A DNA stretch of 64,000 nt from Auanema rhodensis (GCA_964057225.1 OZ059897.1:8370001-8434000); one strand, 5' to 3'. Positions 2,427 to 56,529 are shown, counted from the first letter of the stretch. Notes: generated by a model not told the origin, from the letters alone. Made by a program: numbers and translations.

Positions 2427-3019
2427 CTTGTTACCCGACACGTAAATTAACTTCTTGTCTCTTACTTTCAAATTTTAGCAAAACGAATACAACCACAAAA
2501 GAAAATCTAAAAAAAATTTATTTACATTTCAATAAAAAAAAAACAAAAAACAAATAGATAATTCTCTTTATTTCGTTTTGGTTTTCGTTATTAAAATGAA
2601 CAAAAAAGTCAAAAGAATAACGTTCTCTTGAAAGAAATTTGTTCATAAATTCATTTAAATATGATTTGTCAATGTAATAAGCTTTAACCACCGGACAGAG
2701 TGGGCGGGGGATGAAAGATCATCCTGAGGCAGTTGGTTGACCATATCAGAGCACCCTTTCACAATTTGGTAAGATAAAGAACAAGACCATGTTATGAGAA
2801 AAATTAATTTAGAAAGACTTTTTACAATGAAGTTAGAACCGGTTTGAAGTAAATCGGGAATTATGAGTAATGGTAGTTTCTAGAAATTATTTAAATTTTT
2901 GTTCATTTTGTTCTGAAACGTCGTATGTACAATGGGTTATACAAACAAAAATTTTTGAATTTTGAACCTAAGATAAGGCAAGTCTTAGATGATTTTGGAA
3001 AGATGTTGTGGTTCATTAA

Positions 3020-6000
3020 CTATTGAACAGATGTTCGAATAGGTAAAGCTTGTGGTCGTACAGGTCGTAGAGATCCAGATCCATTCAGATTTCGGTTAGA
3101 GCCCAACAGGCTACGTAGACGATTCCGCAAAGAGATTCTTTCACTGTTACTTGTCACAGTGTCAGCTCTACTTGAACTGAAATATTATGTATGTTAGTTG
3201 ATTTAAGTATCATGGAATTCATACTCTTCCTCTTCTACAATAGGAGGTGTTCCATCTTTTTTCGTTACAAGTTTCTTGAGCCATTGAACGTCAACTCCAA
3301 GTGTGTGACGAGCAGCTGATCCTCTAGCATGCTTCTTCCGTCGAGCAGGTTGCTGTATTTCTTGTGGAGAAGTGATCTGAATCAGTAAAATATAACGTAA
3401 AGTTGTTACTTTTTCATTATAAAATGATCCCATGGGGCCAAAGGTAAGCTTAATGACAATAAATAATTCTTAATGACGATGCTCTAGTTAAAAACATGAA
3501 CGAACAAGCAAAAAAACAGATTTACATGTTATAACTTTTTCGTTGGTTTTCGAGAAAATATGTTCCAAATTTCAAAAAAAAATTGAAAAAGAGATAAAAA
3601 CACATCCAACGTCAGATACCATATACGAAAGCAAGCATTTGCTAATAAATTAGGAGGAAAAGCCAGGTGAGAAAGTTAGCAAAATGAGACACAAAGCTAA
3701 CAAGAGCCAGTCAAACTATGAAGAATCATCACTTACCGGTATCTGTTCGTATGGACTAATTGGCCGTTCCGAAAGCGAAGTAGGAATTTCTTCAATCATA
3801 TCACTCATTCGTTTTGGCTGCTTTTTTCGTGAAGATTTTTTGGCCGATGTCGATATCTTTGAATCTGATGTATCTTCGAAAAGCTGAATGCTCAGACTAG
3901 TTGCTAATCGATCAGATTTGGCTGAAGTTACCGTAGTACAACACTGTAAAACATGCAAAAAATAGCTTTAAACAGCTTAAAATCTAAAGAAAACGTGCAA
4001 TATATTTAGAAAAACGTGCAATCCTCGAAAAAAAAAGTATTCAAGACTCCATAATTGAGTGAAAAATGATTGAAATATTAGAAAAAAGAAAAGCTCATAT
4101 CATATCAGCCAAAAAAAAAGCTAAAAATCCATTCAATAAGGGAAAAATGATTATTCTTTTCATGATTATAATAAAAAAAATTATAAATGAGTGTTTATTG
4201 TGTGAAACTATTCAGAAAATAACTAACCGGAATTTTTTCAGCTGGAGTTTCCACTTTAGTCAAGTTTTGATTTTCTTTCAAAGTTTCTTTGAAGGGTGTA
4301 CAAACATCTGGAAATTATTGAATTGATTATGATGAACTAACAACAATTATCCAGAAACAATCAGCTTTTTATTGAAAAAACTAACAAACCTGTAAGAGAT
4401 GAGGAGATGGGGGCTGTTTCAAGAACTGGAGAGCGTTCTGGACCTGAATAAGCGAAGATTCATTAAAGCTTTAATAAATCTTATGAATTACTTGAAATTT
4501 CTTGATCAAATAGCCCAACTCGATAACAAACAACACTAGCATGATCTAACTTTCCAGGCATATCCATAATCTTTTCACGAACTGCTCGACGACTAAAATA
4601 TTCGAACAAACCAATATAACTTTGAGAAAAAGGCAAATGACTTACATAGCTCGTTGCTCAGCTTTTGTCATTTTTTCTTTTTTATACAATTCAGGATTTT
4701 CTAATGTTTTTCGCTTGGCTCTTAAGAAATTACAGTTTATATGGTATTAAGCGTTTTGTATGAAAACTCACGAGCTGAGCTGAGTAGCAAATTGAATAAG
4801 CCGTTTGCACAAAACAGAGGAAGAAACACGTGAGAATAGTGGCTCATGTCGGGGTGACGATATTCTAGCACTTTCATTGGGTTCCAAGCCATTGGCAATG
4901 ATATCTCGCATGCGAACCAGCATGAGCTCATGCCTGCTAGCTGCATCCACGCACGGTAGACTAGCTGCACAAGTTCGATTCCTTCCGTACTCCTTAGACG
5001 GTGAATCTTTAGTTGAACTGAAACTAGCAAAATGTTAATTTCAGATATGTAACCCATATGACATACACTGCGATAGATCTTGTTTCACGAGGTGGAAGAT
5101 GGGAGTTTTCCTTATTTTCAGATTCAGTTTTCTTAATGACACAGAATTTGCCAACAACTGGATCAAAGTTGTCAGATACACCATCAGAGGTAATGAATAC
5201 CATATCACCTGGAAATTCAAATCATAAAGAATCCGAAAACAATTGTTTCATCTTTGGTTTTACCTTCTTCAACGAAAGTCATACTGCATGTGAAGTTATG
5301 AAGTTGTGGATTTCTACCATCAACTGGACCCAGAGCACCACCAGCATCTCTCATATCTCGCATCTGAACAGTAAAAGTTTCAGAAATATAACAGAAGATT
5401 CATCCAAATTTAAGGCTGAACAGATTGAAAGTGAATTGTCTTTGAGCTTTACGTGACCTTTGAGTGTAAGCCTCTGACAGTTACGTGAACTTTGACGGCA
5501 AGCCTTTGACAGTTACGTGAACTTTGTCCCAAAATATTTTTCAAAACACAGTTAGCGGTCGGTTTTCATTCGTTTTTTGGTCAGAATAATTAAAATATTA
5601 TTCATTTTATTCTTTTAGTTCTATTATTTTTTGAATAAATTAAATTCCTTTTCAATCAAAATATTATTAAAAATAAGTTTAAATATGATAATAACCTGAT
5701 CAATGTCATGACTGCCTAATGTAACTTCACGAACACCATAATTCCTGTTATACACGAAACATAGTGAATCACCTACATTGCAAGCGCATAAAACCCAACT
5801 GAAATTCAATTTTTTTCATTAAAAAAAAGTTAAAAATTCGTTTTTACCTATTTCCATGACGTGCAGGGACTACAACTGCTACACAAAGAGTTGTTAGCAT
5901 CCCACCTTCTTGTAAGATGAGAGAGTGAGCTGAGTGAAAAGCTGCTAATAGTTCATGAAAAACTTCCTATAAAACCAGATTTTGAATAATTTTTTATCAC

Positions 6001-7496
6001 AAAGTTTGACAATACCGCGCTATTAGCCATAGTTCTTCGTGAAATTTGATCATTTAAATGATCTAATGCTCCTCGAATAGCACATCGTGCTGCAAGTCTT
6101 GCTCCCTCGCCCCAATTTACGCCATCGGCCAATGCCAAAATCTAAAAATAATATTTTAAAAACATTCATTTCGTTACTTAATTACAATTTTCACACAAAT
6201 CAGAAGGCAATTGAACGAGAAAGAGGAAAGGAAGAGATAAAAGGCTTGAGAGAGAGAGAGAGAGAAAGGAAATAAAAAATGTTATTTACTTACACCGTTG
6301 TTATTTCGGGCTACAATTCCCCAAACATCAGCAATTGGCTCACCGGCACTAATGCCAGTCAGAGGATTTTTCTCGTACAATGACACAGATAAACCGTAAG
6401 CTCGTTCATTATCATACTGTTGCCAATCATATTGATCTGAAAAAATAATATTTCATATTTCCACAATAGAAATATTCAAGAAAAGTCCCTTGTCAATTGA
6501 AAATATTACGACGAAAATGCAATTTATGAAATGAAAAGGACAAAAAGAGGAATTCTGATGATGAAACCTGCCGACATTCACAACGATTTTTCGATGTTAC
6601 CCCCAAAAAACTTTTTTTTTCTTCCAAAAAAAGAAAAAAACTGAACGGAATAAAGGAGAAATGAACTCCGTTCAGTCATTTGTTACCATTCAATCAATCC
6701 ATTTCATTATGTTTCAAATCATATAGAGAGACCATGTGTCATTCCATCTGTTAACCATCTTTCTACACAAATTTGTAAAAAAAAAGAAGGAAAATTGATT
6801 AGAAATGAAAATTTTTGGTTTTACTTTCTGTTGTTGATCAGGCCTTTTCCCACAAAATTCACACCATATTCTGCATTCAATAACTACGTACCACTTGTAT
6901 CACAAACTATAGGCAAAACTTGAAGCATTATTCAAATGAAATACCAAATATGCTCTTTCAAGCTTACTCTTGGAGCATATAGTATAGGCTTCCGCAGTGT
7001 TGCGAAAGGAGAATATCTGTTTCATATGCAGAAGTGTGAATGGGAACCAAACAACGATGAGTAAAAGCATTTTCTCTCTCCCCCATTCCATAAAACCTTC
7101 ATTTCCTTATATGACTTGAACTTTGATCGAAGTTGTAGCCCTTTTTCCTCTCAACTTCTGCTATTCACACACACATATATATATATATATATACATGAGC
7201 TGAGTCACAGTGAGCAGACTACTTTACGGCTGTTGGCCGACTTTTCCATGATATTCCCTTGGTAATTTGGATATGCTCTGTTCTGAGGTCTTATTGAGGT
7301 TTCAGTCGAAGAGTCAGGAAAAGTTTCGTCCTTTTGGGCTTCCGACTTTCGCAGCATTTTGCCGAAAAAGAAGTTTGAGTTCCGAAAATGTGTCATTCAA
7401 GTCATTACATAAATGCTTTTCAGAAAAGAATATGAAATGTTTCTGAAACAATATGCAGACTTTTTGAATTTTCTCTTGTATATAGTGAGCACGAAG

Positions 7497-7532
<36 letters not shown>

Positions 7533-19755: not shown

Positions 19756-21381
19756 CTACCAGTTTCCGCTGGCAGTGTTGTGCATCCATTTATCCACAAT
19801 GGTCACATTGTACGAAGTTACAAAGTCAATTAGACGGTTTGAACGATCAATTGTCTTTCCTTGATTTGCAGCATATTCTGTATCTTCATTATTCCACAGA
19901 ACATCAACCCAATCCACAACTACCTGACCTCTGTAGAAAAGTTTTTTTATATATTGAATGGAAATGTTATGATATTGAGAATGTATGTATGCATACCTTG
20001 TATATTTCCCAGATAATTCAACATTAACTCGGAATGATGTGTGTTTTCGGATGACTAATTCAGGATGAATAGCAGTTGCTACTGCGATTTCATCACAATA
20101 TGAATATTGTCTTCCGTTTCTAGCCATCATATCGCGTCCTGAATCAATCATGTTTAGATATTTAAATTCTGGGGGGGGGGGGGCTATAGAGTTATGGGTT
20201 TTTACAAGTATCGATACTCACCTATACTTGTAGCAGTTGATAAGAATGAAGCCAATGGTGTCTTATATGTCATATGAGCATTGAAATCAACTTCTTTTTC
20301 ATGCTAAAACTCTAGTTATTTGAAGTCACACCTTCATCTGATATACCTGTGGTCCTTCGAGGAAGAAAGCTTCCCATGGAACTACAGTAATATCTGTCTC
20401 CATTTCCTTCAATACAATAGCAGCTGCTTCTGGATCTCCGTGAAAATTGAATTCAGCTGACGAGTTTGAGTCAACATTTCCAATTCCTACAATTGAAATA
20501 ATGATTGTTGAATTCTGCAGTTTGATCTACCATAATAATTTCCTCCCATAATTACGACCTTTTTAGGCTGTTTAGCAAATTCTGGATCAAGTTTTATTGC
20601 TAAAGCAATGTTAGTCAATGGTCCTATACAAACTAGTGTGATATTAGGATTTTCGCGTGTCAGCTTAATGAGTGCCAAAGCAGCATGGTCAGACTCTGTA
20701 ACTTCGAAATCTTTCGTCAAAACCTGAAACAAAAGGCGTAAATTTTGGATAACAAATGGATACATACCTCTGGAAAAGCTTTTGGCTGGTCTCCAATTCC
20801 GTCTTTTCCAAAGAAAATATTTTCACTTTCAACTATTCCTGGCTTTTTAATGATTGGATTTGCTGCTCCCTTGTAAATTGGAATGGGCTTCTGTAGCATT
20901 TGTAAGATTATGTATTTCATTTCATGTATTAGTTGAATCTTACAGTAACATTATTAGCTCTTTGAGCTCGAGCAACATTAGCTGAAGCTTGATCTACAGT
21001 AGTACATCCATGAACTGTAGTAAAAGCTAAAACCTAAAAAGAAAAATTGAAATATTTCATTTATTGATTATCGTTGTGTTATAATATTTGTTTTTTGTGT
21101 TGAGTTGTGTTCATGAGATATTTCGAACGAACTAGAATAATGGAAAACAAACTTCAGCATCGGGATGCTGCATAGCCAGTGATATAGCTCTGATGTCGTC
21201 AGAAACGCCATCAGTATCTGAAATAAATGAAGACGATATTACTGATAAACAAACTTTTTGGCTACTTTTTCAAAAGAAAAACAAGTAAATGTATGTTGAA
21301 ACAAGCTATATGATACATATATGTTTTGAAATTTGAAAAAAAAGCAAAAAACTTACCAATTATAAGTTGAACTTTCGGCAT
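19756..21381 (-). CDS. Inosine/uridine-preferring nucleoside hydrolase family protein
   Basis: MPKVQLII|DTDGVSDD (DxDxxxDD Ca-binding motif), [55 protein letters not shown] and TRGQVVVDW. Confidence 0.93.
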
Positions 21382-40549: not shown

Positions 40550-42891
40550 CTAAGAATCGCGGGTACTTTGCATACGGAACATGAAGTAGAAAAAGGCAAC
40601 ATTCCCCAGAAAACTAGAGAAAACTAGTGTGCCAATAATAAATTTCATTCCAGCACTTAAAGAAGAACCGTTTTGCTGGCTGATAGAAGTGAATACCTAA
40701 AAAACAATCGAATTCAGGATAGTTAACATGAAACTTACAGAAGGTTCAGGTAGAACTGGAGAATCATTCATCCTTTTCATCGTTCTCTTGCTAACAGAGC
40801 TGAACGCAGAAACAGACTGAGGCCCACGTTGCGATCCGAAGACCGAAGGAGTCTTGAATCTGTCGGACAACTTAAAAAAATACATACAGAGATTTTAAAT
40901 ATAAAAACTTACAATATCACTTGTAAACGAAGGAAAAGCATGATTTTTTTCAGGAGAAAATTTGCTCAACGTACTTTTTCTGTAAAACAAATAAAAGGTC
41001 TTAAAAACTTTTCTCAACAAACCGCAACAGTTGACCATTAGCGAGTGATAAGGACGATAAAGATGGTGCTAATTCCCGCGAAGGAGTAGCCTCTCGAAGT
41101 CCAGTAAAACGATTAAACGGCTTGGCAGAACGAAGTGATGCAACACTTGTACTAACTGTGCTAGTTTCCCAATCCATATCCTATAAACTTAATTTGAGAA
41201 ACAGTAATATTGAATAGAAATAATACTTCTGGACTTTTATCACAAGTTATATTCATTGCACTAGGCTCTGGAGTTTGTGCCTTTTCACGCCAATTCATAC
41301 GGTTTTTGACAAGGGGAGGAGTATTAGATCGTTCCTAGAATATTATCTGTTTAAAAAAAGAAATGAAATTCAAACCTCATCACTTTCAAAGATAGAAGAA
41401 TCGTTTATAGTAGAGCACTGAGAAGCAGGAGTAGAGGCTACAGAGAAAGCACTAAAATATTATTTTCGACCTTGTTTAAAGAAATTGTTAACCAAACAAA
41501 CCTATGGAGAATTTTATTGGGACGCTTCCTATGTAACTTCTTTCTCGGTACAAATGTTATTGCGCTAGACAAAATAATCATAAATGAGGTAAAAGCACAT
41601 CTAAAGAGAATGAGATCTTCCTGATAATCCTGGAAAAAAAAGAAATGCTATATATAAAAAAGAAAAAAGATTTATACATACTTTTTCAGGTACAAAATAG
41701 GTAAGCAACAAAGCAACTCCTGTTGCAGGATAGATAAGATCAGGTAAGGTGGTTCTATTCCTAAAATATTTAAATTAATTCAAAATATGGAAAAAAAAGT
41801 ATACTTATTGCTATATAAAGCCAATAAATGAGCTAATAGAGATACCAGAAGGATATGTTTTCCATAATAAACCAAATACGGTAAGACAGGCTGTATAACC
41901 TCAGGAAAGTTTACAAATTCGACACCGGCATCCTGAATTATTGATATTTAAAAATAAGCAGAAAAACAAACAACCTCTTGAAGAAAATGCAGATTACCAA
42001 AAAACAGCACAGTTGTCAAGAATAAAGAGAATAAATGAGATATTTCAGTAGTCTTTCCTCCAGCAAAAAATTGTCTTCTATGTCGACGAGTTACCTAAAT
42101 ACTTCAAACTAAGTTTCAATGCAAAATATGTATATACTCTAGATGCCAATTTAACAACATTGCGACAAGCTGATTTTACACCAGGGATGATAGTATCCCG
42201 AAGATTTAGCAAATAACTAAATTGTCTCTGAAATACGTAATAAAGTTAGACCATGACACACAACAGAACTTAAACAACCTTATCGTCCTCTAACTTGCGA
42301 TGAGCGTAAATGCTGCAACTGGTACACAAAGCATACACTTTGTCAAGTTTGTATTTGAATTCTTCTAATTCTTCTTCCCATCGATTCTTAACAGAAAACT
42401 ATAGACTCACATTTTCACAGACACTCAACCTCATTGATGGGCTCGAAATCAGCTATTTGTTTCATAATAGTACCTTGTTTAATATTGCACGGGTCGCACA
42501 AGCCATTTCCTTTAGGTACCTCAGACTTTGATGAAACACAATATCTTAATACACAAAAAATAAGTAAAAATGAAAAATACTATTAATATCAAACCTTCCA
42601 TTGTTTGAAATTGTTCCAATAGTTTTCTGCCCAGGGATCCTTTTATTATAATCTCCAGACTCGTTGAAACCGTTATATTGGCCACAACTCAGACAATCGA
42701 AAGAGTTTTTTTGTGCATATGGAACTTTGCTGTTCTCATTACAGAACCAGCAATTAACAGTTGTATTTGTATGACGCCTAATATACTTATGAATTTCATT
42801 TAAATTCAAGAATTCAATAATAATACCTAATAAATTTAACTCCTGCATATCCCACTGCTGTAGTGGCAACTGCAGCAATAGTCAGCTCCAT
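40550..42891 (-). CDS. samp-1: TMEM201/Samp1/Ima1 inner nuclear membrane protein
   Basis: VNCWFCNENSKVPYAQKNSFDCLSCGQYNGFNESGDYNK (Ima1_N Zn-finger), further CxxC pairs, transmembrane exons, a Ser-rich region and a C-terminal hydrophobic helix ending ..STRDS*. Confidence 0.9.
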
Positions 42892-49648: not shown

Positions 49649-52600
49649 TTAAACAGCGATTCTTTGACCGGTAGTAGGAGGCGGAATATCGATGGTGTCG
49701 TTTATTGGGTTCGTGAAGGACTCAAACCTGAAATAACTGGGACTCACAGGTTTAATCAAGTAGCTTATGTCAATTTTCAATGTAATCCTAAAAGTTTAAA
49801 TCAAGCTGAAGCCTAACTAAAACTATTAGCTGGCAATACATAGCCCTGAGCGCATAAATGAGATAGAATATTAATGAATAGGTGCTAAGCACAAATAAAC
49901 GGACAAAAAAAGTTTGAAAAAAAAAGAAAAAAAAAAGAAATGAGAACTGGCCTGGTTCCATACCACAGTTCGCGGATACGATCACGCATTCGATCTATAA
50001 TACGTAGTGCTCTTACACTACGGGAGTCGCTGCCAGCGCCTGAACATGATGAAAAATAACAAAAGTTCTCAAAAAAAAGTAATATTTCATAATTGTAATA
50101 TAGCGTGCGACCACGTGCAAACCAGTAGCCCAGACGATTACTTTGAATTAAGAGTTATTTTCCCAGACGATCACATTGATAAGGTGGATTTATAACATAT
50201 GCATTGTGTTTGGGTGCGAATAAGATGAGACAAGAACATCCGAACTAAACCTTTGTGAATCTAAGTTCACCAAACCTGTCGACATTAAAATCGAATGAAA
50301 TGATGCGCCACAACTTCAAACACAAAAGGCAAAGCTCTTACTCCATCGTGCACTGTTAATTGCGTTAGTGAGAAGCTAGACACATACCTACCAAGGTTTA
50401 ATAGAGCATTTGGAGCAAACGATGCTTGAACTGTTGGTGAAGACAATTCAGCCGCTGGAGCTGAATCTACAAATTCTTTAAGAATTGAACGTTCTGCTTC
50501 AAAATTTTCAGTATATCTCTCCTGTAAAAAAATATTTTGATAGCGAGCATCAAACAAAAACTGACCTTTACAACTTCATAAGCATCCATAATAATAGCAA
50601 TGAAAAGGGAAAGAACTACATAAATAAATAGAGAGACAAAGCAGTAAATATAAATTGTTCCAAATACCTCAAAAAATTGAAATAAATAAATGTATTTAGA
50701 ATTTAAAAAGCTTACTTTGATAACGGTATTTGAATCATTAATCGTGTAAAAGGTAGCAAACATGTCGTCGCCATTAAGTAACGAGAACAGAGCTTCAGAA
50801 GACTCACCCAAAGTACGGAACTGAAATATTGAAACTATTGAGGAAAGAGTTCGGATATAAACAAACCTTCATGCTGTAAGGTCCGATGATTACCCAGCCG
50901 GCAATTAAGAATCCAGCATAAAGTACGATAGCACAAGTCATGAAACGTAACATGTTTGGCAAAGATTTCTTCATTGTCAAAATCAGAATCTAAAATATTC
51001 ATTATGAGGAACACAAAACAATCCTAAAACTTACATTATATTGACTGAAAAATCCGAAGTATCTTAGAACTCCAACGTATACAAGAAGAGCACCCATTCC
51101 CAAAAATATTCCCGTTAAAGTGAACAATGAATTGTCGAAATCCTATGAGAAAAAAACATAAAAGAAGGCATACCGCACAATGAACTTACTCGGAATTCGA
51201 TGGTTATCTTACTTACAGTTCCCACAATGATAAGAGCATCATTAATAACAATCATAACATACCTAAATTAGTAACATAACACCTTGCCTTTATGAATATA
51301 AAACTTACCATAAATTAAGAAAATCTAATTGATCTGTAATTGGAAGTTTTCTTCTCACAGTATTCTCAAAGAAATCAACAGCTTTCTGAAAACAAAGAAG
51401 AAAAAAGATAAGTAGGAGATAAGAAAGCTTACAGTCTTCAGTAAATGAGCTTTAATTAAAGCTCTAAGACATAGAATAAGAGAAAGAACACAGAATAACA
51501 AAACCAAAACATCCGTAACGCCCATAATCAGGGTATCTGTTCCCCAGCCAACGCCTAGAACAGCGGATAATTAAAATATTCTATTTGATCTGAATTTGGA
51601 AATTTTCAAATTTCACAAACCTTTAATAATTCGTCCATTACAGACATTCACATAAGAAATAACTGTTGCAAGCGTAACATGTACTTGTCCCGTATGACGA
51701 GAATTGTCGAACGTTATAGAAATCTAAGAAAAACAAAAAAATGCTTATCAACAAAATAACATTACATCGATCTTGTAGCATTCAGGCCTTTGATCACCAT
51801 GTTGTGGGCTGAAGTGAATGGTTCTTAACTTGAAATTGAAAATTACTTTAGAGATAATCAACGCATCTTCAGATGTAAACGTTAAACCTAAAAACAAAGT
51901 TAAAACCATATCGATGACAGTCGCAAACCTTTAGATTTCAAGGCTGTAATTACATTAGCTGGATCTTCTTCAATGCTTTTAACATCAGCTTCAGTGAAGT
52001 TTAATTGCATACAAACTGAAATAAAACTATATCATAATAAAAAAATAATCAATATACTCACGGGTCATGTCTCGAATATCAAAATCATAAGTGTTATTAT
52101 TAACTGTAACATTTGTGATTCTATCCACACATGCCTATAAACAGATCCAAATTTCATATAAACAACATTTTTTCAAGCTTACACTGATAGGTGGAATGAG
52201 TTTAAAATTAATACCAGCAGTTAGAGAAGCATTATGAGATTCCAAGAAAGGGTCGCGAGGAGGACGAACCATATCATAACTGAATGAAGCAAACGAGTCT
52301 GATTGAAGAGAATAATACTATAAATTATTTTTTATTTCCTATCATTTGTTTCTTTTTAGCTTACTGATGTGATGATGTATTGCAGATGTTCAAATATTCC
52401 ATTTCCATCATAAACAGAATAACGTCCTTCAGCTGGAGGATATTGTAGTGCGTCTCTATCATCATCCCAATTCTTAATGATAAAATGCAATAATAAATAA
52501 TTTCAATTTGCAAGATACCTTCAAGAATCTATGACGCATAACTGTATTAGTATCTTCCATAAAATCCACATGCGACATGCGCATTTCAGCAAAAAGAATT

Positions 52601-52954: not shown

Positions 52955-54677
52955 CTTAAAAAAAAATTTTGAAGAAAGTTTTAGCTTACAATTAAAAATT
53001 CAATATTTAAATTTAGTAGGATTCGTTCAAGATTCCCGTACAGTTCATCGAAAATAGGGTCGCAGATGGCTGAGGTCAAAAGATTTGGGAGCGTGCAAGT
53101 GAAAATGTCACGTACATCGGGATTTGTTGATTGAAGACATAAGGCATAGAATCAAAATAGTAGTACTTATCTGAGTACTAGCGAGCATATGATTGTAAAG
53201 GAAGCTCAACAAGTAAACCGTTTATCATTTTTCGATTATTTAGATTTGTAATCGACAACATGCAAAGGCTGCAGATTTAGAAATCACCGCTTAACTATTC
53301 TCACACAGATGGGGGATTATTTCAATGACATTTTAATTAGGAAAAAGATGTAAAGTCTGATATCGAATCTAATTTGAAGATAAGACGTACCTCTTTCAAT
53401 GGTACATTATCTGTTACCGTTGCCACAACCATGCTAAATGTTCTTTTTTAAAAATTCCTTTATAAGAAATGATAGCTTAAAACGAGATAAAAATATCGAG
53501 TATTTTGCTGAGAAATAAAATATAGATATCTACTGAATATAGGATTTATAAGTTGTGTAGCAACCGTTTTCCGAAAAAAAAAATAGAAAACAAATCTTCT
53601 CTGTAGGCTCTCTCGTTAGCAAATAAGCAATCAGAGTTCGAAAGATCAATGAGAAAATAACAATTATAATGAATGTAAAAATCATTAGAAAACCGACAAA
53701 AATAGAAAAAATGAACTGATAAAAGCTTTAGAATTTTTCTAGTTTTTAAGTTGTGAATATGTCAGCTCTTTCATCCAATTTTATGTCTGCATATTTTGCG
53801 GGGGCGATTAATCCTGCAAATCAGCGAGCAAATTACGTAACAGGTTGGAGTTTTGCATAAACATTCAGAAATTAAATATAAAACTAGTTAAAATATTATT
53901 ATATTTATCAGTATGACTCAAAATTGAAACTTTATTATACGTTTCAAACAGAGATTCACATATGATCATGGCTAAAGCGAGGGTATTGATTCTGAGTGAC
54001 TAGATGCATGAGTTTAGTTGTGATTGGATTTTAGAAAATTGTTCTATTATATATGAAATTAATAAAGTATGTAATCTCCTTTGAAAGCCCTAAATTGATT
54101 ATAAACGCTGAGAATATTCAGCAGGTTGTTTGATTTTTCAATTTGATGCTACTTTTGGTTTTTGTTTCCTTATATGAGATTTCAGCTAAGGAAAATAGCA
54201 ACAATTTGACAAAAACATTTTTTTAATATTAGTATACGACTGTCTTATCTGGTATTAATGAAAATGTTTATATGGCGCAAAGAAATAAAACATTTTATTA
54301 GAGCATACCACAAAAAAAAAAGATAAAAGAAAATAATCAAAACGAACTCCATCAACTCCATTAAAAGTTCGTTGAGCTTTTTGAAAGATAGATATCGGAA
54401 AATCTTTGTTCTAAATATTGAAACACTGACTGACGAATTTCAGATATTGAACCTCCTGCTGCGAAAGCTTCATTCATCTACAATAGCTTAAGCTAATACT
54501 GTGTTTGAACTCTCTCTAAACAACATTTCATCCACCCGAAGAGAACTTTTTTCAACCTTTAATCTTGTGCAATCATTCTTAACCGAATGTAATCAGAAAA
54601 CCCTTTGCAAAGCGGAAAAAGTTTTATAAATATCGTAATAATCTCGATTTCAAAAGCATAATTTGAAAATTCTAATT

Positions 54678-55955
54678 CTATAGACGAAGGACGAGACATT
54701 GGCATGCTCCACCACTCTTCATGAACTCGCTCATATTCACTTCAATAACCTCGAAGCCACGAGCAGCTAGAGCTGCACGGGTTTTGTCTTCAACACCAAC
54801 CGGAGAAATAACAGCGTTTCTAACAGTTATAGCATTACAGATAAATGCTTTAGCTTCTTGCTCAGAGACGGCAATTGAATTTGGCATTCGAGTTATAATC
54901 TGAATGTCATGGTTCTTGTTTATATAAAAATCTTAATATACTTCTTCCTGAGTTTTAGCACTGAATGCTGGAGGGTAATATATAGCTGTAGTTTCATCAA
55001 CTGGGCAGAAACATGTATCCAAGTGGTAAAACCTAGGATCTACAGTCTCGCAGATGACTGTTTCAAAATTCCCGATAGCTTTCAAACGATCAATAGCCTA
55101 GAAATCAAAAATTTGTTTTCAAGAGATTATTAAATTTTTGAAACCTCGAGGGAGCTTCTCTCTCCATAGCCAGCCCAAAGAGTATGAGGATCAGAGAAAA
55201 CAACGTCTCCTCCTCCTTCGAAAATGCCTTGAGAATCTTGGCCAAAGATAGTGAAGCCATTATCTTGGAACCATTTCAAATAATGCTTTTCTTCTCCAGT
55301 TCTGTAATTCAATTGAATTTGAATTAAGAAAATGGTTAAAAAATAGTTTAAAAAAATTTAGTAAGCGGCTTACCTTTCCTTGTGTCTGAACCTGCTCAAG
55401 AAAACATTTTTTCCACAAACAAGTCCACTGTTGCAAACAAAAACTTGGTCGGGCAGATCAGGTTGCTGTTCAAGCGTTAAAACCTTAAAATAATGAAACC
55501 TGATCGATATATACATGAAAGTGCACACCGGCTAATAAGGCCGTTATTAAGTTACGTGAAAGTTCACGTATAAAATAATTGCAGCGACCAATTCACGTGG
55601 AAGTTCACGTAGAGCACAGATACATGCCTGTCAACTACAGTTGACAGTTTATTTAAGCCAGTTGCATAGTTTAGAAATCAAACTCTCGGTGCGAATGTAC
55701 TCATTTGATCTTTGATCTGTAAAATTAACAAAAGTTCTCACTTCAACTCCTTGTTTAGCAATAGCATCCCTAAGAGCAGTCCACTGTTTCATAGCTAAAT
55801 TCTTGTCGACAGTTCCTCCCATCCAAGGATTAATGTTATACTGCAAATAAGATTTTTTCAATCATATAAGGAAAATAAGAGTTTACTTCAACAGTAAAAT
55901 GATCCGGTGGAACCATCAAAACTCGTTGCATAAGTGCTCCAGAAGCTTTAGACAT
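54678..55955 (-). CDS. Bacterial-type amidinotransferase/pentein enzyme, very similar to the ArgZ/AgrE arginine dihydrolase domain
   Basis: Six exons (55955-55887, 55840-55742, 55483-55374, 55301-55145, 55097-54942, 54899-54678) give ..VLMVPPDHFTVEYNINPWM..QW..LPDQVFVCNSGL..LSRFRHKERTGEE..WF..FEGGGD..LWAGYGERS..RFYHLDTCFCP..YYPPAF..FICNA..SEFMKSGGACQCLVLRL*, with an intact Glu/His/Cys catalytic set. Confidence 0.9.
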
Positions 55956-56529
55956 GTTTCAACCTGTTATAATTAAGAAACATTATTTAAATTATAAATT
56001 ATTTGTGTTTAATTAATGCGATATTTCTGAGAATGAACGAAAAAAAGAAAGAAAATCATCTAATGTTCCCAGTGCGAATGCCATGAAGGTCTCACTCGCT
56101 GAATGAACTGATAAGAAATATGTAATGATATCGTCTTATTTAATAATATACTTATAGTTATATTTTTGGAACAAAGCTAACACGTGAATAACAACATTTA
56201 CTCAAAATTCTGATGGATATATCATGCTTTTAAAAAAATATTGCCCACATATGTCCGGTGTCCAATTTCATTGAGTTAGTTGAAACAATCTAGAATTCGA
56301 TTATTTCATAAGTTCATTTGTATTTTTGTTTGTAAAATCTAACTGAAGTTCTTTCAGTTTGATAAAATCTGATATAATGACGCCATTTATATTGATTTCC
56401 TTCATTGTACATTGTACCTTCACTCATACTTTCTTACATTTTAGACAATTAAGGCATTTTTAGTGAATTTATATGAAATTCTTATTTGCTTAGCTCAAAC
56501 ATTAATAATTCATTTCGTATATATTCAGA

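What the first reader, a model, noticed from the sequence alone, without database searches (positions are those of the whole stretch)
54678..55955. Intron-containing animal gene encoding a putative ArgZ-type arginine dihydrolase (probable horizontal transfer from bacteria)
Seen: six GT-AG exons give a ~275-aa protein with YNINPWM, LPDQVFVCNSG, RHKER-GEE, FEGGGD, LWAGYGERS, FYHLDTCFCP, YYPPAF, FICNA and KSGGACQC. Known (recalled): the N-terminal domain of cyanobacterial ArgZ/AgrE has YVINPWM, WPDMVFTANAG, HKERQGEE, FEGAGD, LWAGYGFRS, FYHLDTCFCP, YYPPAF, FACNA and KAGGAAKC. It converts Arg to ornithine + CO2 + 2 NH3. The Asn of VFxxN, which is Asp in arginine deiminase, DDAH and GATM, is associated with the double hydrolysis, and it is retained here. 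The protein resembles neither animal DDAH nor GATM. Inference: this nematode has a domesticated bacterial enzyme providing urea-free arginine catabolism or ornithine supply, suited to ammonia excretion. I recall an uncharacterised C. elegans homolog (ZK1307.1), so the gene may already be catalogued while its activity is undescribed.
Basis: partly seen in the sequence, partly recalled or inferred. Interest (0 to 1): 0.88.

Follow-up and report, generated by a model that had tools for sequence, protein, structure and literature searches.

The report
Nematode gene for bacterial-type arginine hydrolase
This is a real, spliced and expressed nematode gene, the counterpart of the uncharacterised C. 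elegans gene ZK1307.1, that nematodes acquired long ago from bacteria and that most resembles a cyanobacterial enzyme converting arginine straight to ornithine and ammonia, an activity not yet shown in any animal.

Summary
Six GT-AG exons on the minus strand (55955..54678) give a 270-aa protein. All five introns appear as exact joints in RNA-derived contigs.

The protein is a guanidino-group hydrolase. The nearest solved structures are ArgZ and AgrE, the cyanobacterial arginine dihydrolases (model of a 68%-identical ortholog: TM 0.92, rmsd 1.4 Å, 39-40% identity). Human DDAH1 (15-16%) and GATM (12%) are far more distant. The Cys265/His170/Glu121 triad, Asn74 (ArgZ Asn71) and the family-invariant polar residues are all kept.

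The gene belongs to an old pan-nematode family, from Trichinella to Caenorhabditis, that includes C. elegans ZK1307.1. This family (clade A) has an equally old sister paralog (clade B). The two together nest inside Gammaproteobacteria/Legionellales-like single-domain proteins. They do not nest inside the fused ArgZ clade (AU p = 1e-6).

The family passes neither NCBI's arginine-dihydrolase cut-off (about 230-244 bits against 450) nor the Mycobacterium-type "dimethylargininase" cut-off (216-235 against 300).

Bacterial relatives are repeatedly fused to, or lie beside, ornithine-using enzymes (cyclodeaminase, aminotransferase, decarboxylase). Rv2323c is needed for arginine use in M. tuberculosis. 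So arginine to ornithine is the best-supported activity (about 0.5), but it is untested. Methylarginine hydrolysis (DDAH-like) is the main rival.

The gene is already catalogued, while its activity and bacterial origin appear undescribed.

The parts
55887..55955 (-). Exon 1 (ATG at 55955-55953), aa 1-23
   Evidence: Gene model. Joint 55840|55887 in RNA-derived contigs.
55956..55963 (-). Short 5' UTR. Contigs stop at 55963, directly after TTATAACAG, which is a possible trans-splice acceptor (inferred).
   Evidence: records 9 and 12 end at 55963.
55742..55840 (-). Exon 2, aa 24-56 (YNINPWM; invariant Asn27)
55484..55741 (-). Intron 2 (258 nt). It holds three copies of a palindrome-containing motif (TACGTGAAAGTTCACGTA-like) spaced 41 nt apart, and a minor alternative donor at 55529.
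   Evidence: Joint 55483|55742 and the minor joint 55483|55529. Repeats.
55374..55483 (-). Exon 3, aa 57-93 (LPDQVFVCNSG; Asp68; Asn74 at 55430-55432, which is ArgZ Asn71). Codon 93 (Arg) is split 2+1 by intron 3.
55145..55301 (-). Exon 4, aa 93-145 (FEGGGD; Glu121 at 55217-55219, which is ArgZ Glu118; LWAGYGERS)
54942..55097 (-). Exon 5, aa 146-197 (FYHLDTCFCP; His170 at 55023-55025, which is ArgZ His168; YYPPAF). The intron before it (phase 0, E145|A146) is at the same aligned position as a Trichinella intron.
54678..54899 (-). Exon 6, aa 198-270 plus the stop codon (FICNA; KSGGACQC; catalytic Cys265 at 54696-54698, which is ArgZ Cys264)
54572..54677 (-). 3' UTR, as far as the RNA-derived contigs reach
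   Evidence: X10 record 1 starts at 54572; the others start at 54643.

Best explanation
The locus is an expressed, six-exon nematode gene for a 270-aa single-domain enzyme of the guanidino-group-modifying (pentein) superfamily. The enzyme is probably cytosolic, because only about 10 residues precede the catalytic domain.

Origin. The gene is the ortholog of C. elegans ZK1307.1. It descends from a bacterial single-domain gene whose nearest living relatives are in Gammaproteobacteria/Legionellales-like bacteria. That gene entered the lineage before crown nematodes diverged and then duplicated into two families. This gene belongs to family A.

Mechanism, inferred by homology to ArgZ/AgrE. Cys265 attacks the guanidino carbon of free L-arginine, with His170 and Glu121 as the other two members of the triad. 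The family-invariant polar residues Asp68, Arg93, Asp125, Arg141 and Asp172 probably hold the substrate, although their individual roles were not checked. Asn74 takes the place where the Bacillus DDAH-family protein examined here carries Asp. The covalent thiouronium intermediate is probably hydrolysed twice, giving ornithine, CO2 and two ammonia without urea.

What is shown and what is inferred. Shown: the gene structure, expression, fold, conserved residues, phylogenetic position and bacterial gene contexts. Inferred: the substrate, the double hydrolysis and the physiological role (ornithine supply and ammonia release in ammonia-excreting worms that lack a urea cycle).
For: Gene and expression:
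- Searches confirm the gene model and all five splice joints.

Family and fold:
- Single exons hit only ArgZ (Sll1336) and AgrE (Alr4995) at the top of the PDB search.
- An AlphaFold model of the colinear 68%-identical ortholog P0153 has pLDDT 96.6.
- That model matches the ArgZ N-domain at TM 0.92, rmsd 1.4 Å and 39-40% identity. P. aeruginosa DDAH gives 0.83 and 21%, human DDAH1 0.78 and 15%, GATM 0.70 and 12%.

Residues:
- N27, D68, N74, R93, E121, D125, H170, D172 and C265 are kept in at least 96% of 243 homologs. These plus R141 are kept in the 60-row alignment.
- The PDB entry 6JUZ is titled 'ArgZ(N71S) covalently bond to a reaction intermediate'. This ties that Asn to the completion of the reaction.

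Function by context:
- 10 of 80 bacterial loci encode the fused ArgZ-type protein (about 680-860 aa). The ornithine-cyclodeaminase part was confirmed in two of them (L034, L017).
- 10 of 80 loci have an ornithine-oxo-acid transaminase directly adjacent. Three were tested and score 520-573 bits against the TIGR01885 cut-off of 378. They include L001 and L010 from the bacterial clade nearest the nematodes.
- One MAG has an Orn/Arg decarboxylase overlapping the gene's end.
- Mycobacterium has the arrangement Lrp, ddaH, rocD, permease.
- An M. tuberculosis Rv2323c knockout cannot grow on arginine and loses 13C flow from arginine into proline and glutamate. The wild type converts arginine to ornithine, and M. 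tuberculosis has no arginase homolog (PMC4569260).

Origin:
- All named eukaryotic hits in three searches are nematodes.
- In the careful tree, clade A has support 100/99 and A+B has 94/97. Both sit inside a clade of support 99/95 whose other members are named gammaproteobacterial or Legionellales MAG proteins and unnamed metagenomic sequences.
- The clade-B member P0275 is 52-56% identical to gammaproteobacterial proteins.
- A phase-0 intron is shared with Trichinella.
Against: - No activity has been measured for any nematode member or for any single-domain bacterial member.
- Nematode orthologs score only 230-244 bits on NF052232 'arginine dihydrolase' (cut-off 450). They score almost the same, 216-235 bits, on NF045659 'dimethylargininase, Mtb type' (cut-off 300).
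- The nematode clade is not inside the ArgZ clade (AU p = 1e-6).
- Asn74 is family-wide, including proteins annotated as dimethylargininase. It therefore cannot separate the two annotated activities.
- Clade A has derived residues next to that Asn: VFxCNSG, against VFTANAG/A in bacteria, ArgZ and clade B. Its specificity may have shifted.
- Pfam's best match is DDAH_eukar.
- C. elegans has an arginase homolog and a measurable arginase activity that N-hydroxy-arginine (NOHA) inhibits (PMC6780408). An extra route from arginine to ornithine is therefore not required.
Confidence: 0.55

Rival explanations
1. It is the nematode methylarginine hydrolase. It would act like DDAH and clear free ADMA and MMA released from methylated proteins, giving citrulline plus methylamines.
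For: Pfam's best hit is DDAH_eukar, and UniProt names some orthologs 'Dimethylargininase'. Scores on the Mycobacterium-type dimethylargininase model almost equal those on the arginine-dihydrolase model, and for clade B member P0314 they are higher. A 1999 report, cited in PMC9610479, lists M. tuberculosis among bacteria with DDAH-like enzymes.
Against: The Mycobacterium-type 'ddaH' sits in an arginine/ornithine operon and is needed for arginine use. The nearest bacterial relatives lie beside ornithine-using enzymes, which fits ornithine as the product, not citrulline. Identity to solved DDAHs is only 15-22%. The B. velezensis DDAH-family protein examined has Asp where this protein has Asn. C. 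elegans has no urea-cycle genes to use citrulline (PMC6780408).
Confidence: 0.2
2. It performs a single hydrolysis of arginine to citrulline (arginine deiminase-like), or it acts on another guanidino compound such as agmatine, canavanine, homoarginine or a nematode-specific metabolite. This specificity would have evolved after the duplication into clades A and B.
For: Clade A carries derived residues beside the key Asn (Cys73, Ser75) and evolves faster than clade B. Two paralogs have been kept since the nematode ancestor, which suggests a division of labour. The superfamily is chemically versatile; NnhA, SxtG and HsvA are among the fold matches.
Against: The ten residues tracked as family-invariant (N27, D68, N74, R93, E121, D125, R141, H170, D172, C265) are unchanged in every named clade A ortholog in the alignment. 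Citrulline would be a dead end in worms.
Confidence: 0.15
3. It is an amidinotransferase, as the database name says. It would move the amidino group from arginine to an acceptor.
For: The automatic name 'Amidinotransferase' (Pfam PF02274 clan) is attached to most orthologs.
Against: Solved amidinotransferases (GATM, StrB1, SxtG) are about 350-360 residues long. They match at only 12-16% identity and TM 0.68-0.77. The name derives from an old Pfam family label and not from any assay.
Confidence: 0.04

Closest known systems
ArgZ (Sll1336, Synechocystis) and AgrE (Alr4995, Anabaena) N-terminal arginine dihydrolase domain; PDB 6JUY, 6JUZ, 6JV0, 6JV1, 6LRF-H
   Same: The fold is the same (TM 0.91-0.92, rmsd 1.4-1.6 Å, 37-40% identity). 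The Cys/His/Glu triad and Asn71 are kept. The shared motifs are PDxVFxxNxG, FEGxGD, LWAGYGxRS, FYHLDTCFCP, YYPPAF and GGAxxC.
   Different: The nematode protein has a single domain with no ornithine-cyclodeaminase part. It scores about half of NCBIfam's cut-off. It lies in a different bacterial-type clade (AU test p = 1e-6). Clade A has Cys and Ser flanking the Asn. It is eukaryotic and has introns.
Single-domain homologs of Gammaproteobacteria and Legionellales MAGs (L001, L010, P0245, P0289, P0393)
   Same: They are the nearest bacterial relatives in the trees. They have the same length and domain content and identical residues at the tracked invariant positions. L001 and L010 lie directly upstream of an ornithine aminotransferase.
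   Different: They are uncharacterised. They have no introns and sit in operons. They are 43-45% identical to this protein and up to 56% identical to nematode clade B.
Mycobacterium-type 'dimethylargininase' (Rv2323c; NCBIfam NF045659)
   Same: It belongs to the same broader family, with the same triad and Asn. It is linked genetically to arginine catabolism and sits in an operon with rocD.
   Different: It forms a more basal clade. The nematode proteins score 216-235 bits, below the 300-bit cut-off. Its annotated activity (DDAH) conflicts with its genetics.
Animal DDAH1/2 and GATM
   Same: They share the superfamily fold and the Cys/His catalytic residues.
   Different: Identity is 12-16% and TM 0.70-0.78. 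There is no orthology, and the nematode gene branches within bacteria.

Membership tests
Guanidino-group-modifying (pentein) enzyme superfamily | Pentein alpha/beta propeller fold | tested here: met
   The model of ortholog P0153 has pLDDT 96.6. All top Foldseek hits are superfamily members.
Guanidino-group-modifying (pentein) enzyme superfamily | Catalytic Cys near the C-terminus with His and an acidic partner | tested here: met
   Cys265, His170 and Glu121 align with ArgZ Cys264, His168 and Glu118.
ArgZ/AgrE-type arginine dihydrolase (NCBIfam NF052232, equivalog domain) | HMM score at or above the curated cut-off of 450 bits | tested here: not met
   Nematode orthologs, including ZK1307.1, score 230-244 bits. 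The window's exons sum to about 184 bits. A true cyanobacterial ArgZ scores 521.
ArgZ/AgrE-type arginine dihydrolase (NCBIfam NF052232, equivalog domain) | Asn at the ArgZ Asn71 position | tested here: met
   Asn74 lies in VFVCNSG. It is also present in 234 of 243 family members, so it does not discriminate.
ArgZ/AgrE-type arginine dihydrolase (NCBIfam NF052232, equivalog domain) | Placement inside the ArgZ clade | tested here: not met
   In three trees it groups with gammaproteobacterial single-domain proteins. The AU test rejects a clade of nematodes plus fused ArgZ (p = 1e-6).
ArgZ/AgrE-type arginine dihydrolase (NCBIfam NF052232, equivalog domain) | Converts L-arginine to ornithine, CO2 and 2 NH3 | not testable with these tools
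   This needs an enzyme assay.
Bifunctional ArgZ (NF052231) | C-terminal ornithine cyclodeaminase domains | tested here: not met
   The protein is 270 aa and ends at the catalytic Cys motif.
Mycobacterium-type dimethylargininase (NF045659) | HMM score at or above 300 bits | tested here: not met
   Nematode orthologs score 216-235 bits. M. ulcerans, Pseudonocardia and Kitasatospora ddaH score 387-475.
Eukaryotic DDAH (Pfam PF19420; animal DDAH1/2) | Pfam domain match | tested here: met
   Exon 6 alone scores 24.8 bits against a cut-off of 23. Orthologs carry precomputed PF19420 hits.
Eukaryotic DDAH (Pfam PF19420; animal DDAH1/2) | Close similarity or orthology to animal DDAH | tested here: not met
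   Identity to human DDAH1 structures is 15-16% and TM is 0.78. The gene nests among bacterial proteins.
Amidinotransferases (GATM, StrB1) | Close similarity to solved amidinotransferases, which are about 350-360 residues long | tested here: not met
   Identity is 12-16%, TM is 0.68-0.77, and the targets are 340-360 aa.

The most novel reading that the evidence does not exclude
Nematodes carry a pair of anciently acquired bacterial arginine dihydrolases: clade A, which includes ZK1307.1 and this gene, and clade B. This would be the first such enzyme in animals. It would be a one-step, urea-free route from arginine to ornithine plus two ammonia. It would feed polyamine and proline synthesis, and it is apparently absent from current descriptions of worm metabolism. 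Part of what has been attributed to arginase in worms might be due to it.
Probability: 0.45. Interest if true: 0.72.

Novelty: new member of a known kind. Interest (0 to 1): 0.58.

Why it matters
If the activity is confirmed, animals would gain an enzyme class so far known only from bacteria. Arginine metabolism in C. elegans and in parasitic nematodes would then need a new reaction. Arginine is essential for these worms and they have no urea cycle.

The family is present in hookworms, Ascaris, Trichuris, Trichinella, Strongyloides and plant-parasitic nematodes. No member from another animal phylum was named among the best hits. That makes it a conceivable selective drug target.

It also bears on a likely misannotation. 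The Mycobacterium-type 'dimethylargininase' lies beside rocD and is needed for arginine use, so it may itself be an arginine dihydrolase. The question is directly testable with ZK1307.1 mutants and recombinant protein.

Tried and rejected
- Pfam on single exons was almost blind; only exon 6 hit.
- I tried to build a query profile from one bacterial protein plus the six exon fragments. MAFFT scattered the fragments, so alignment A1 was discarded.
- The spliced protein could not be handed to the remote tools by reference. I searched with exon 6 alone and then worked through full-length orthologs. P0153 is 270 aa and aligns without gaps, so its numbering equals the window's.
- The two ArgZ/AgrE structure papers (PMC7029115, PMC7186175) are not held. 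Residue roles therefore rest on PDB alignments, PDB titles and my own recollection.
- I tested whether Asn against Asp at position 74 separates arginine dihydrolases from Mycobacterium-type 'DDAH'. It does not; both have Asn.
- An operon with a downstream gene was considered and dropped. There is no RNA cover at 54400-54521, and I saw no convincing downstream gene start on the minus strand before about 53430.
- No second copy or clade-B paralog lies in this window.
- The scan's earlier notes had nothing at this place.
- The organism is coded. It is a rhabditid-like nematode whose closest ortholog is from Mesorhabditis (70.5% identity). Its own protein was not among the listed database hits.

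Full report
**1. The observation**

Reading the minus strand of 54300-56400 and assembling the exons in a script gives six exons: 55955-55887, 55840-55742, 55483-55374, 55301-55145, 55097-54942 and 54899-54678. Every intron is GT..AG. The CDS is 813 nt and encodes 270 aa.

Fifteen public runs hold the stretch. Four of them, from one study, hold only about 41-48% of its sampled words, which equals the exonic share. Laying those four runs shows contigs with all five predicted joints at the exact boundaries and no sequence differences. The runs labelled DNA hold the whole stretch, so the spliced form comes from RNA. The gene is therefore real, spliced and expressed.

- A minor joint, 55483 to 55529, keeps 213 nt of intron 2 and runs into a stop. 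It is a non-productive isoform.
- Several contigs end at 55963, immediately after TTATAACAG. That fits a trans-splice acceptor, but this is an inference only.

**2. What the protein is**

NCBIfam matches every exon except the first to 'arginine dihydrolase' (NF052232) and to the Mycobacterium-type 'dimethylargininase' (NF045659). Against all PDB sequences, exons 3 to 6 hit ArgZ (Sll1336) and AgrE (Alr4995) first. The alignments place four window residues on ArgZ residues: Asn74 on Asn71, Glu121 on Glu118, His170 on His168 and Cys265 on Cys264.

The spliced protein cannot be passed to the remote tools by reference. I therefore searched 1.84 billion representative proteins with exon 6. This gave the full-length ortholog P0003, which is 66.7% identical over all 270 residues.

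An AlphaFold model of P0153 (Angiostrongylus; 270 aa, no gaps, 68% identical) has pLDDT 96.6. Its Foldseek matches against the PDB were:

| Target | TM-score | rmsd | Identity |
|---|---|---|---|
| ArgZ N-domain (6JUZ, 6JV0, 6JV1) | 0.92 | 1.4-1.5 Å | 39-40% |
| AgrE | 0.91-0.92 | 1.5-2.3 Å | 36-38% |
| P. aeruginosa DDAH | 0.80-0.83 | 2.4-3.3 Å | 21-22% |
| Human DDAH1 | 0.71-0.79 | 3.4-5.1 Å | 14-17% |
| GATM | 0.68-0.71 | 6.1-6.8 Å | 12% |

**3. Who has it**

The search with P0003 returned orthologs named 'Amidinotransferase' from all major nematode groups. They include strongylids, Caenorhabditis, Pristionchus, Ascaris, Toxocara, Anisakis, Steinernema, Strongyloides, Meloidogyne, Globodera, Bursaphelenchus, Plectus, Trichuris and Soboliphyme. 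P0027 is from Trichinella, where the gene has introns and sits between a gene with a faint MAM-domain hit and a collagen-domain gene.

The window's protein is closest to the Mesorhabditis ortholog (70.5%). The 90%-identity cluster of the C. brenneri protein contains 'Uncharacterized protein ZK1307.1' of C. elegans (Q09359). In the searchable literature ZK1307.1 appears once, listed as uncharacterised in a table of genes mostly chosen as PAL-1 targets.

Two further searches brought up a second nematode family, clade B. It is found in Romanomermis, Soboliphyme, Acrobeloides, Diploscapter, Heterorhabditis, Steinernema, Heterodera, Globodera, Trichostrongylus and C. auriculariae. In all three searches every named eukaryotic hit was a nematode.

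A few unnamed transcripts and one intron-less contig with a 7tm_1 (GPCR) neighbour also fall in clades A and B. Their organisms are unknown.

Yoshida et al. 2017 (PMC5531438, Table 3) list an orthogroup 'Amidinotransferase (PF02274)' present in 8 of 9 nematodes, 0 of 15 arthropods and 1 of 2 tardigrades. It is very probably this family. I could not place the tardigrade member.

**4. Origin**

A scan of bacterial and archaeal genomes with exon 5 found 546 relatives. Full-length identities to the window protein are 37-45%. This range covers both single-domain proteins and the N-terminal part of fused cyanobacterial ArgZ.

Two quick trees and one careful tree agree.
- Clade A is monophyletic (100/99). 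Its internal order roughly follows nematode phylogeny.
- Clades A and B are sisters (94/97).
- Together they sit in a clade of support 99/95. Its other members are proteins of Gammaproteobacteria and Legionellales MAGs (L001, L010, P0245, P0289) and unnamed metagenomic sequences.
- Fused ArgZ lies in another large clade.
- The Mycobacterium-type ddaH is more basal.

An AU test rejects nematodes plus fused ArgZ as one clade (ΔlnL 140, p = 1e-6). One caution applies: the group was named after the tree had been seen.

The clade-B member P0275 is 52-56% identical to gammaproteobacterial proteins. A phase-0 intron lies at the same aligned position in this gene (E145|A146) and in Trichinella (A142|V143).

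The simplest history is one transfer from a gammaproteobacterium-like donor before crown nematodes diverged, followed by duplication. Vertical descent with loss in all other eukaryotes is not strictly excluded, because only the best 120 hits of each search are visible.

**5. Function**

Nine polar and catalytic residues (N27, D68, N74, R93, E121, D125, H170, D172, C265) are kept in at least 96% of 243 homologs. These nine plus R141 are kept in all named nematode rows of both clades in the 60-row alignment.

On curated models the nematode proteins pass neither cut-off.

| Protein | NF052232 arginine dihydrolase (cut-off 450) | NF045659 Mtb-type dimethylargininase (cut-off 300) |
|---|---|---|
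| Nematode orthologs | 230-244 | 216-235 |
| Cyanobacterial ArgZ (L034) | 521 | 245 |
| Actinobacterial ddaH (L081-L083) | 195-202 | 387-475 |

The nematode family is thus a third branch between two annotated ones.

The Asn argument does not separate those two branches. M. ulcerans ddaH also has Asn at this position (VYAANGG). A more distant Bacillus DDAH-family protein has Asp. The PDB title of 6JUZ, 'ArgZ(N71S) covalently bond to a reaction intermediate', shows that this Asn matters for completing the reaction.

Independent evidence points to ornithine as the family's product.
- Ten of 80 bacterial loci encode the fused ArgZ-type protein, about 680-860 aa. The ornithine-cyclodeaminase part was confirmed in two of them.
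- Ten of 80 loci have a class-III aminotransferase directly adjacent. All three that were tested pass TIGR01885 for ornithine-oxo-acid transaminase. L001 and L010, from the clade nearest the nematodes, are among them.
- One MAG has an ornithine/arginine decarboxylase overlapping the gene's end.
- In Mycobacterium the arrangement is an Lrp regulator gene next to ddaH, rocD and a permease.
- In M. tuberculosis the Rv2323c knockout cannot grow on arginine and loses carbon flow from arginine to proline and glutamate. The wild type converts arginine to ornithine although no arginase homolog exists (PMC4569260).

Both characterised branches that bracket the nematode clade are therefore tied to arginine breakdown. 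I take arginine dihydrolase as the most likely activity, at about 0.5 for clade A.

Several caveats remain.
- Clade A has Cys and Ser flanking the Asn, where bacteria, ArgZ and clade B have Ala.
- A secondary citation lists DDAH-like enzymes in M. tuberculosis.
- C. elegans has an arginase homolog, T21F4.1, and a measurable arginase activity that is inhibited by N-hydroxy-arginine (NOHA). It has no urea cycle and requires dietary arginine (PMC6780408).

**6. Comparison and novelty**

The gene works like, and folds like, the ArgZ N-domain. It is not an ArgZ equivalog, because three defining features were tested and not met: the curated score, the clade and the fusion. It is best filed as a nematode branch of the broader family of ArgZ-N/Rv2323c-like guanidino hydrolases.

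The gene is catalogued, under an automatic and probably wrong name ('Amidinotransferase'). Its restricted distribution has been noted once (Yoshida et al. 2017). I found no paper that links it to arginine dihydrolase or to a bacterial origin.

**7. Verdict**

- The finding is a new member of a known kind.
- Interest is moderate to high, because the question can be settled directly in C. elegans and the family is present across parasitic nematodes.

Noticed in passing
window 55512-55611 (intron 2): Three copies of a 15-22 nt motif, each containing a palindrome (TACGTGAAAGTTCACGTA-like, with ACGTG cores and AGTTCA half-sites), lie 41 nt apart inside the longest intron. They may form an intronic regulatory element.
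   Followed up: partly
window 55483-55769: A minor isoform uses an alternative donor at 55529, or retains intron 2, and runs into a stop after GVEV. In one run its contig depth exceeds that of the productive joint (5.8 against 3.1 in X14).
   Followed up: partly
window 55956-55972: RNA-derived contigs end at 55963, just after TTATAACAG and 8 nt upstream of the ATG. This looks like a nematode trans-splice acceptor. No SL1 gene copy lies in the window.
   Followed up: partly
proteins P0274, P0282, P0287, P0290, P0303, P0305, P0312, P0314, P0325, P0326: There is a second, equally old nematode paralog family (clade B). It keeps the bacterial VFTANAA motif and is up to 56% identical to gammaproteobacterial proteins. 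Whether C. elegans or this genome has one was not determined, and none lies in this window.
   Followed up: partly
L081 (M. ulcerans plasmid) 3914-7529; L001, L010, L019 and other loci: The PGAP name 'dimethylargininase' for the Mycobacterium-type protein may be a misnomer. The gene overlaps rocD and precedes an amino-acid permease. Published genetics ties Rv2323c to arginine use.
   Followed up: partly
L082 (Pseudonocardia plasmid) 2968-6088; L092 4001-6018: Two other contexts for family members were seen. One lies inside an NRPS and P450 cluster, possibly supplying ornithine. The other overlaps an ornithine/arginine decarboxylase gene in a MAG.
   Followed up: no
proteins P0167 (Haemonchus placei), P0201, P0211: Some clade A members have changed active-site residues. 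P0167 has His for Asn74 and Ser for the catalytic Cys, so it is probably inactive. P0201 has Asp for Asn74. P0211 has Gln for His170.
   Followed up: no
window 42546-42878 (-), 50467-50811 (-), 19756-20151 (-): Other exons in the window match Ima1_N (E = 7e-15) and, weakly, an ion-channel/polycystin domain and a nucleoside hydrolase. These are ordinary eukaryotic neighbours. The window has 33.6% GC.
   Followed up: no
L089 (SRR10482239 transcript), L091 (SRR25018404 contig): Unnamed eukaryote-like members of clades A and B were seen. One is a 57%-GC transcript. The other is an intron-less copy on a contig with a GPCR fragment. They could come from nematode groups without sequenced genomes or from other phyla.
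   Followed up: partly
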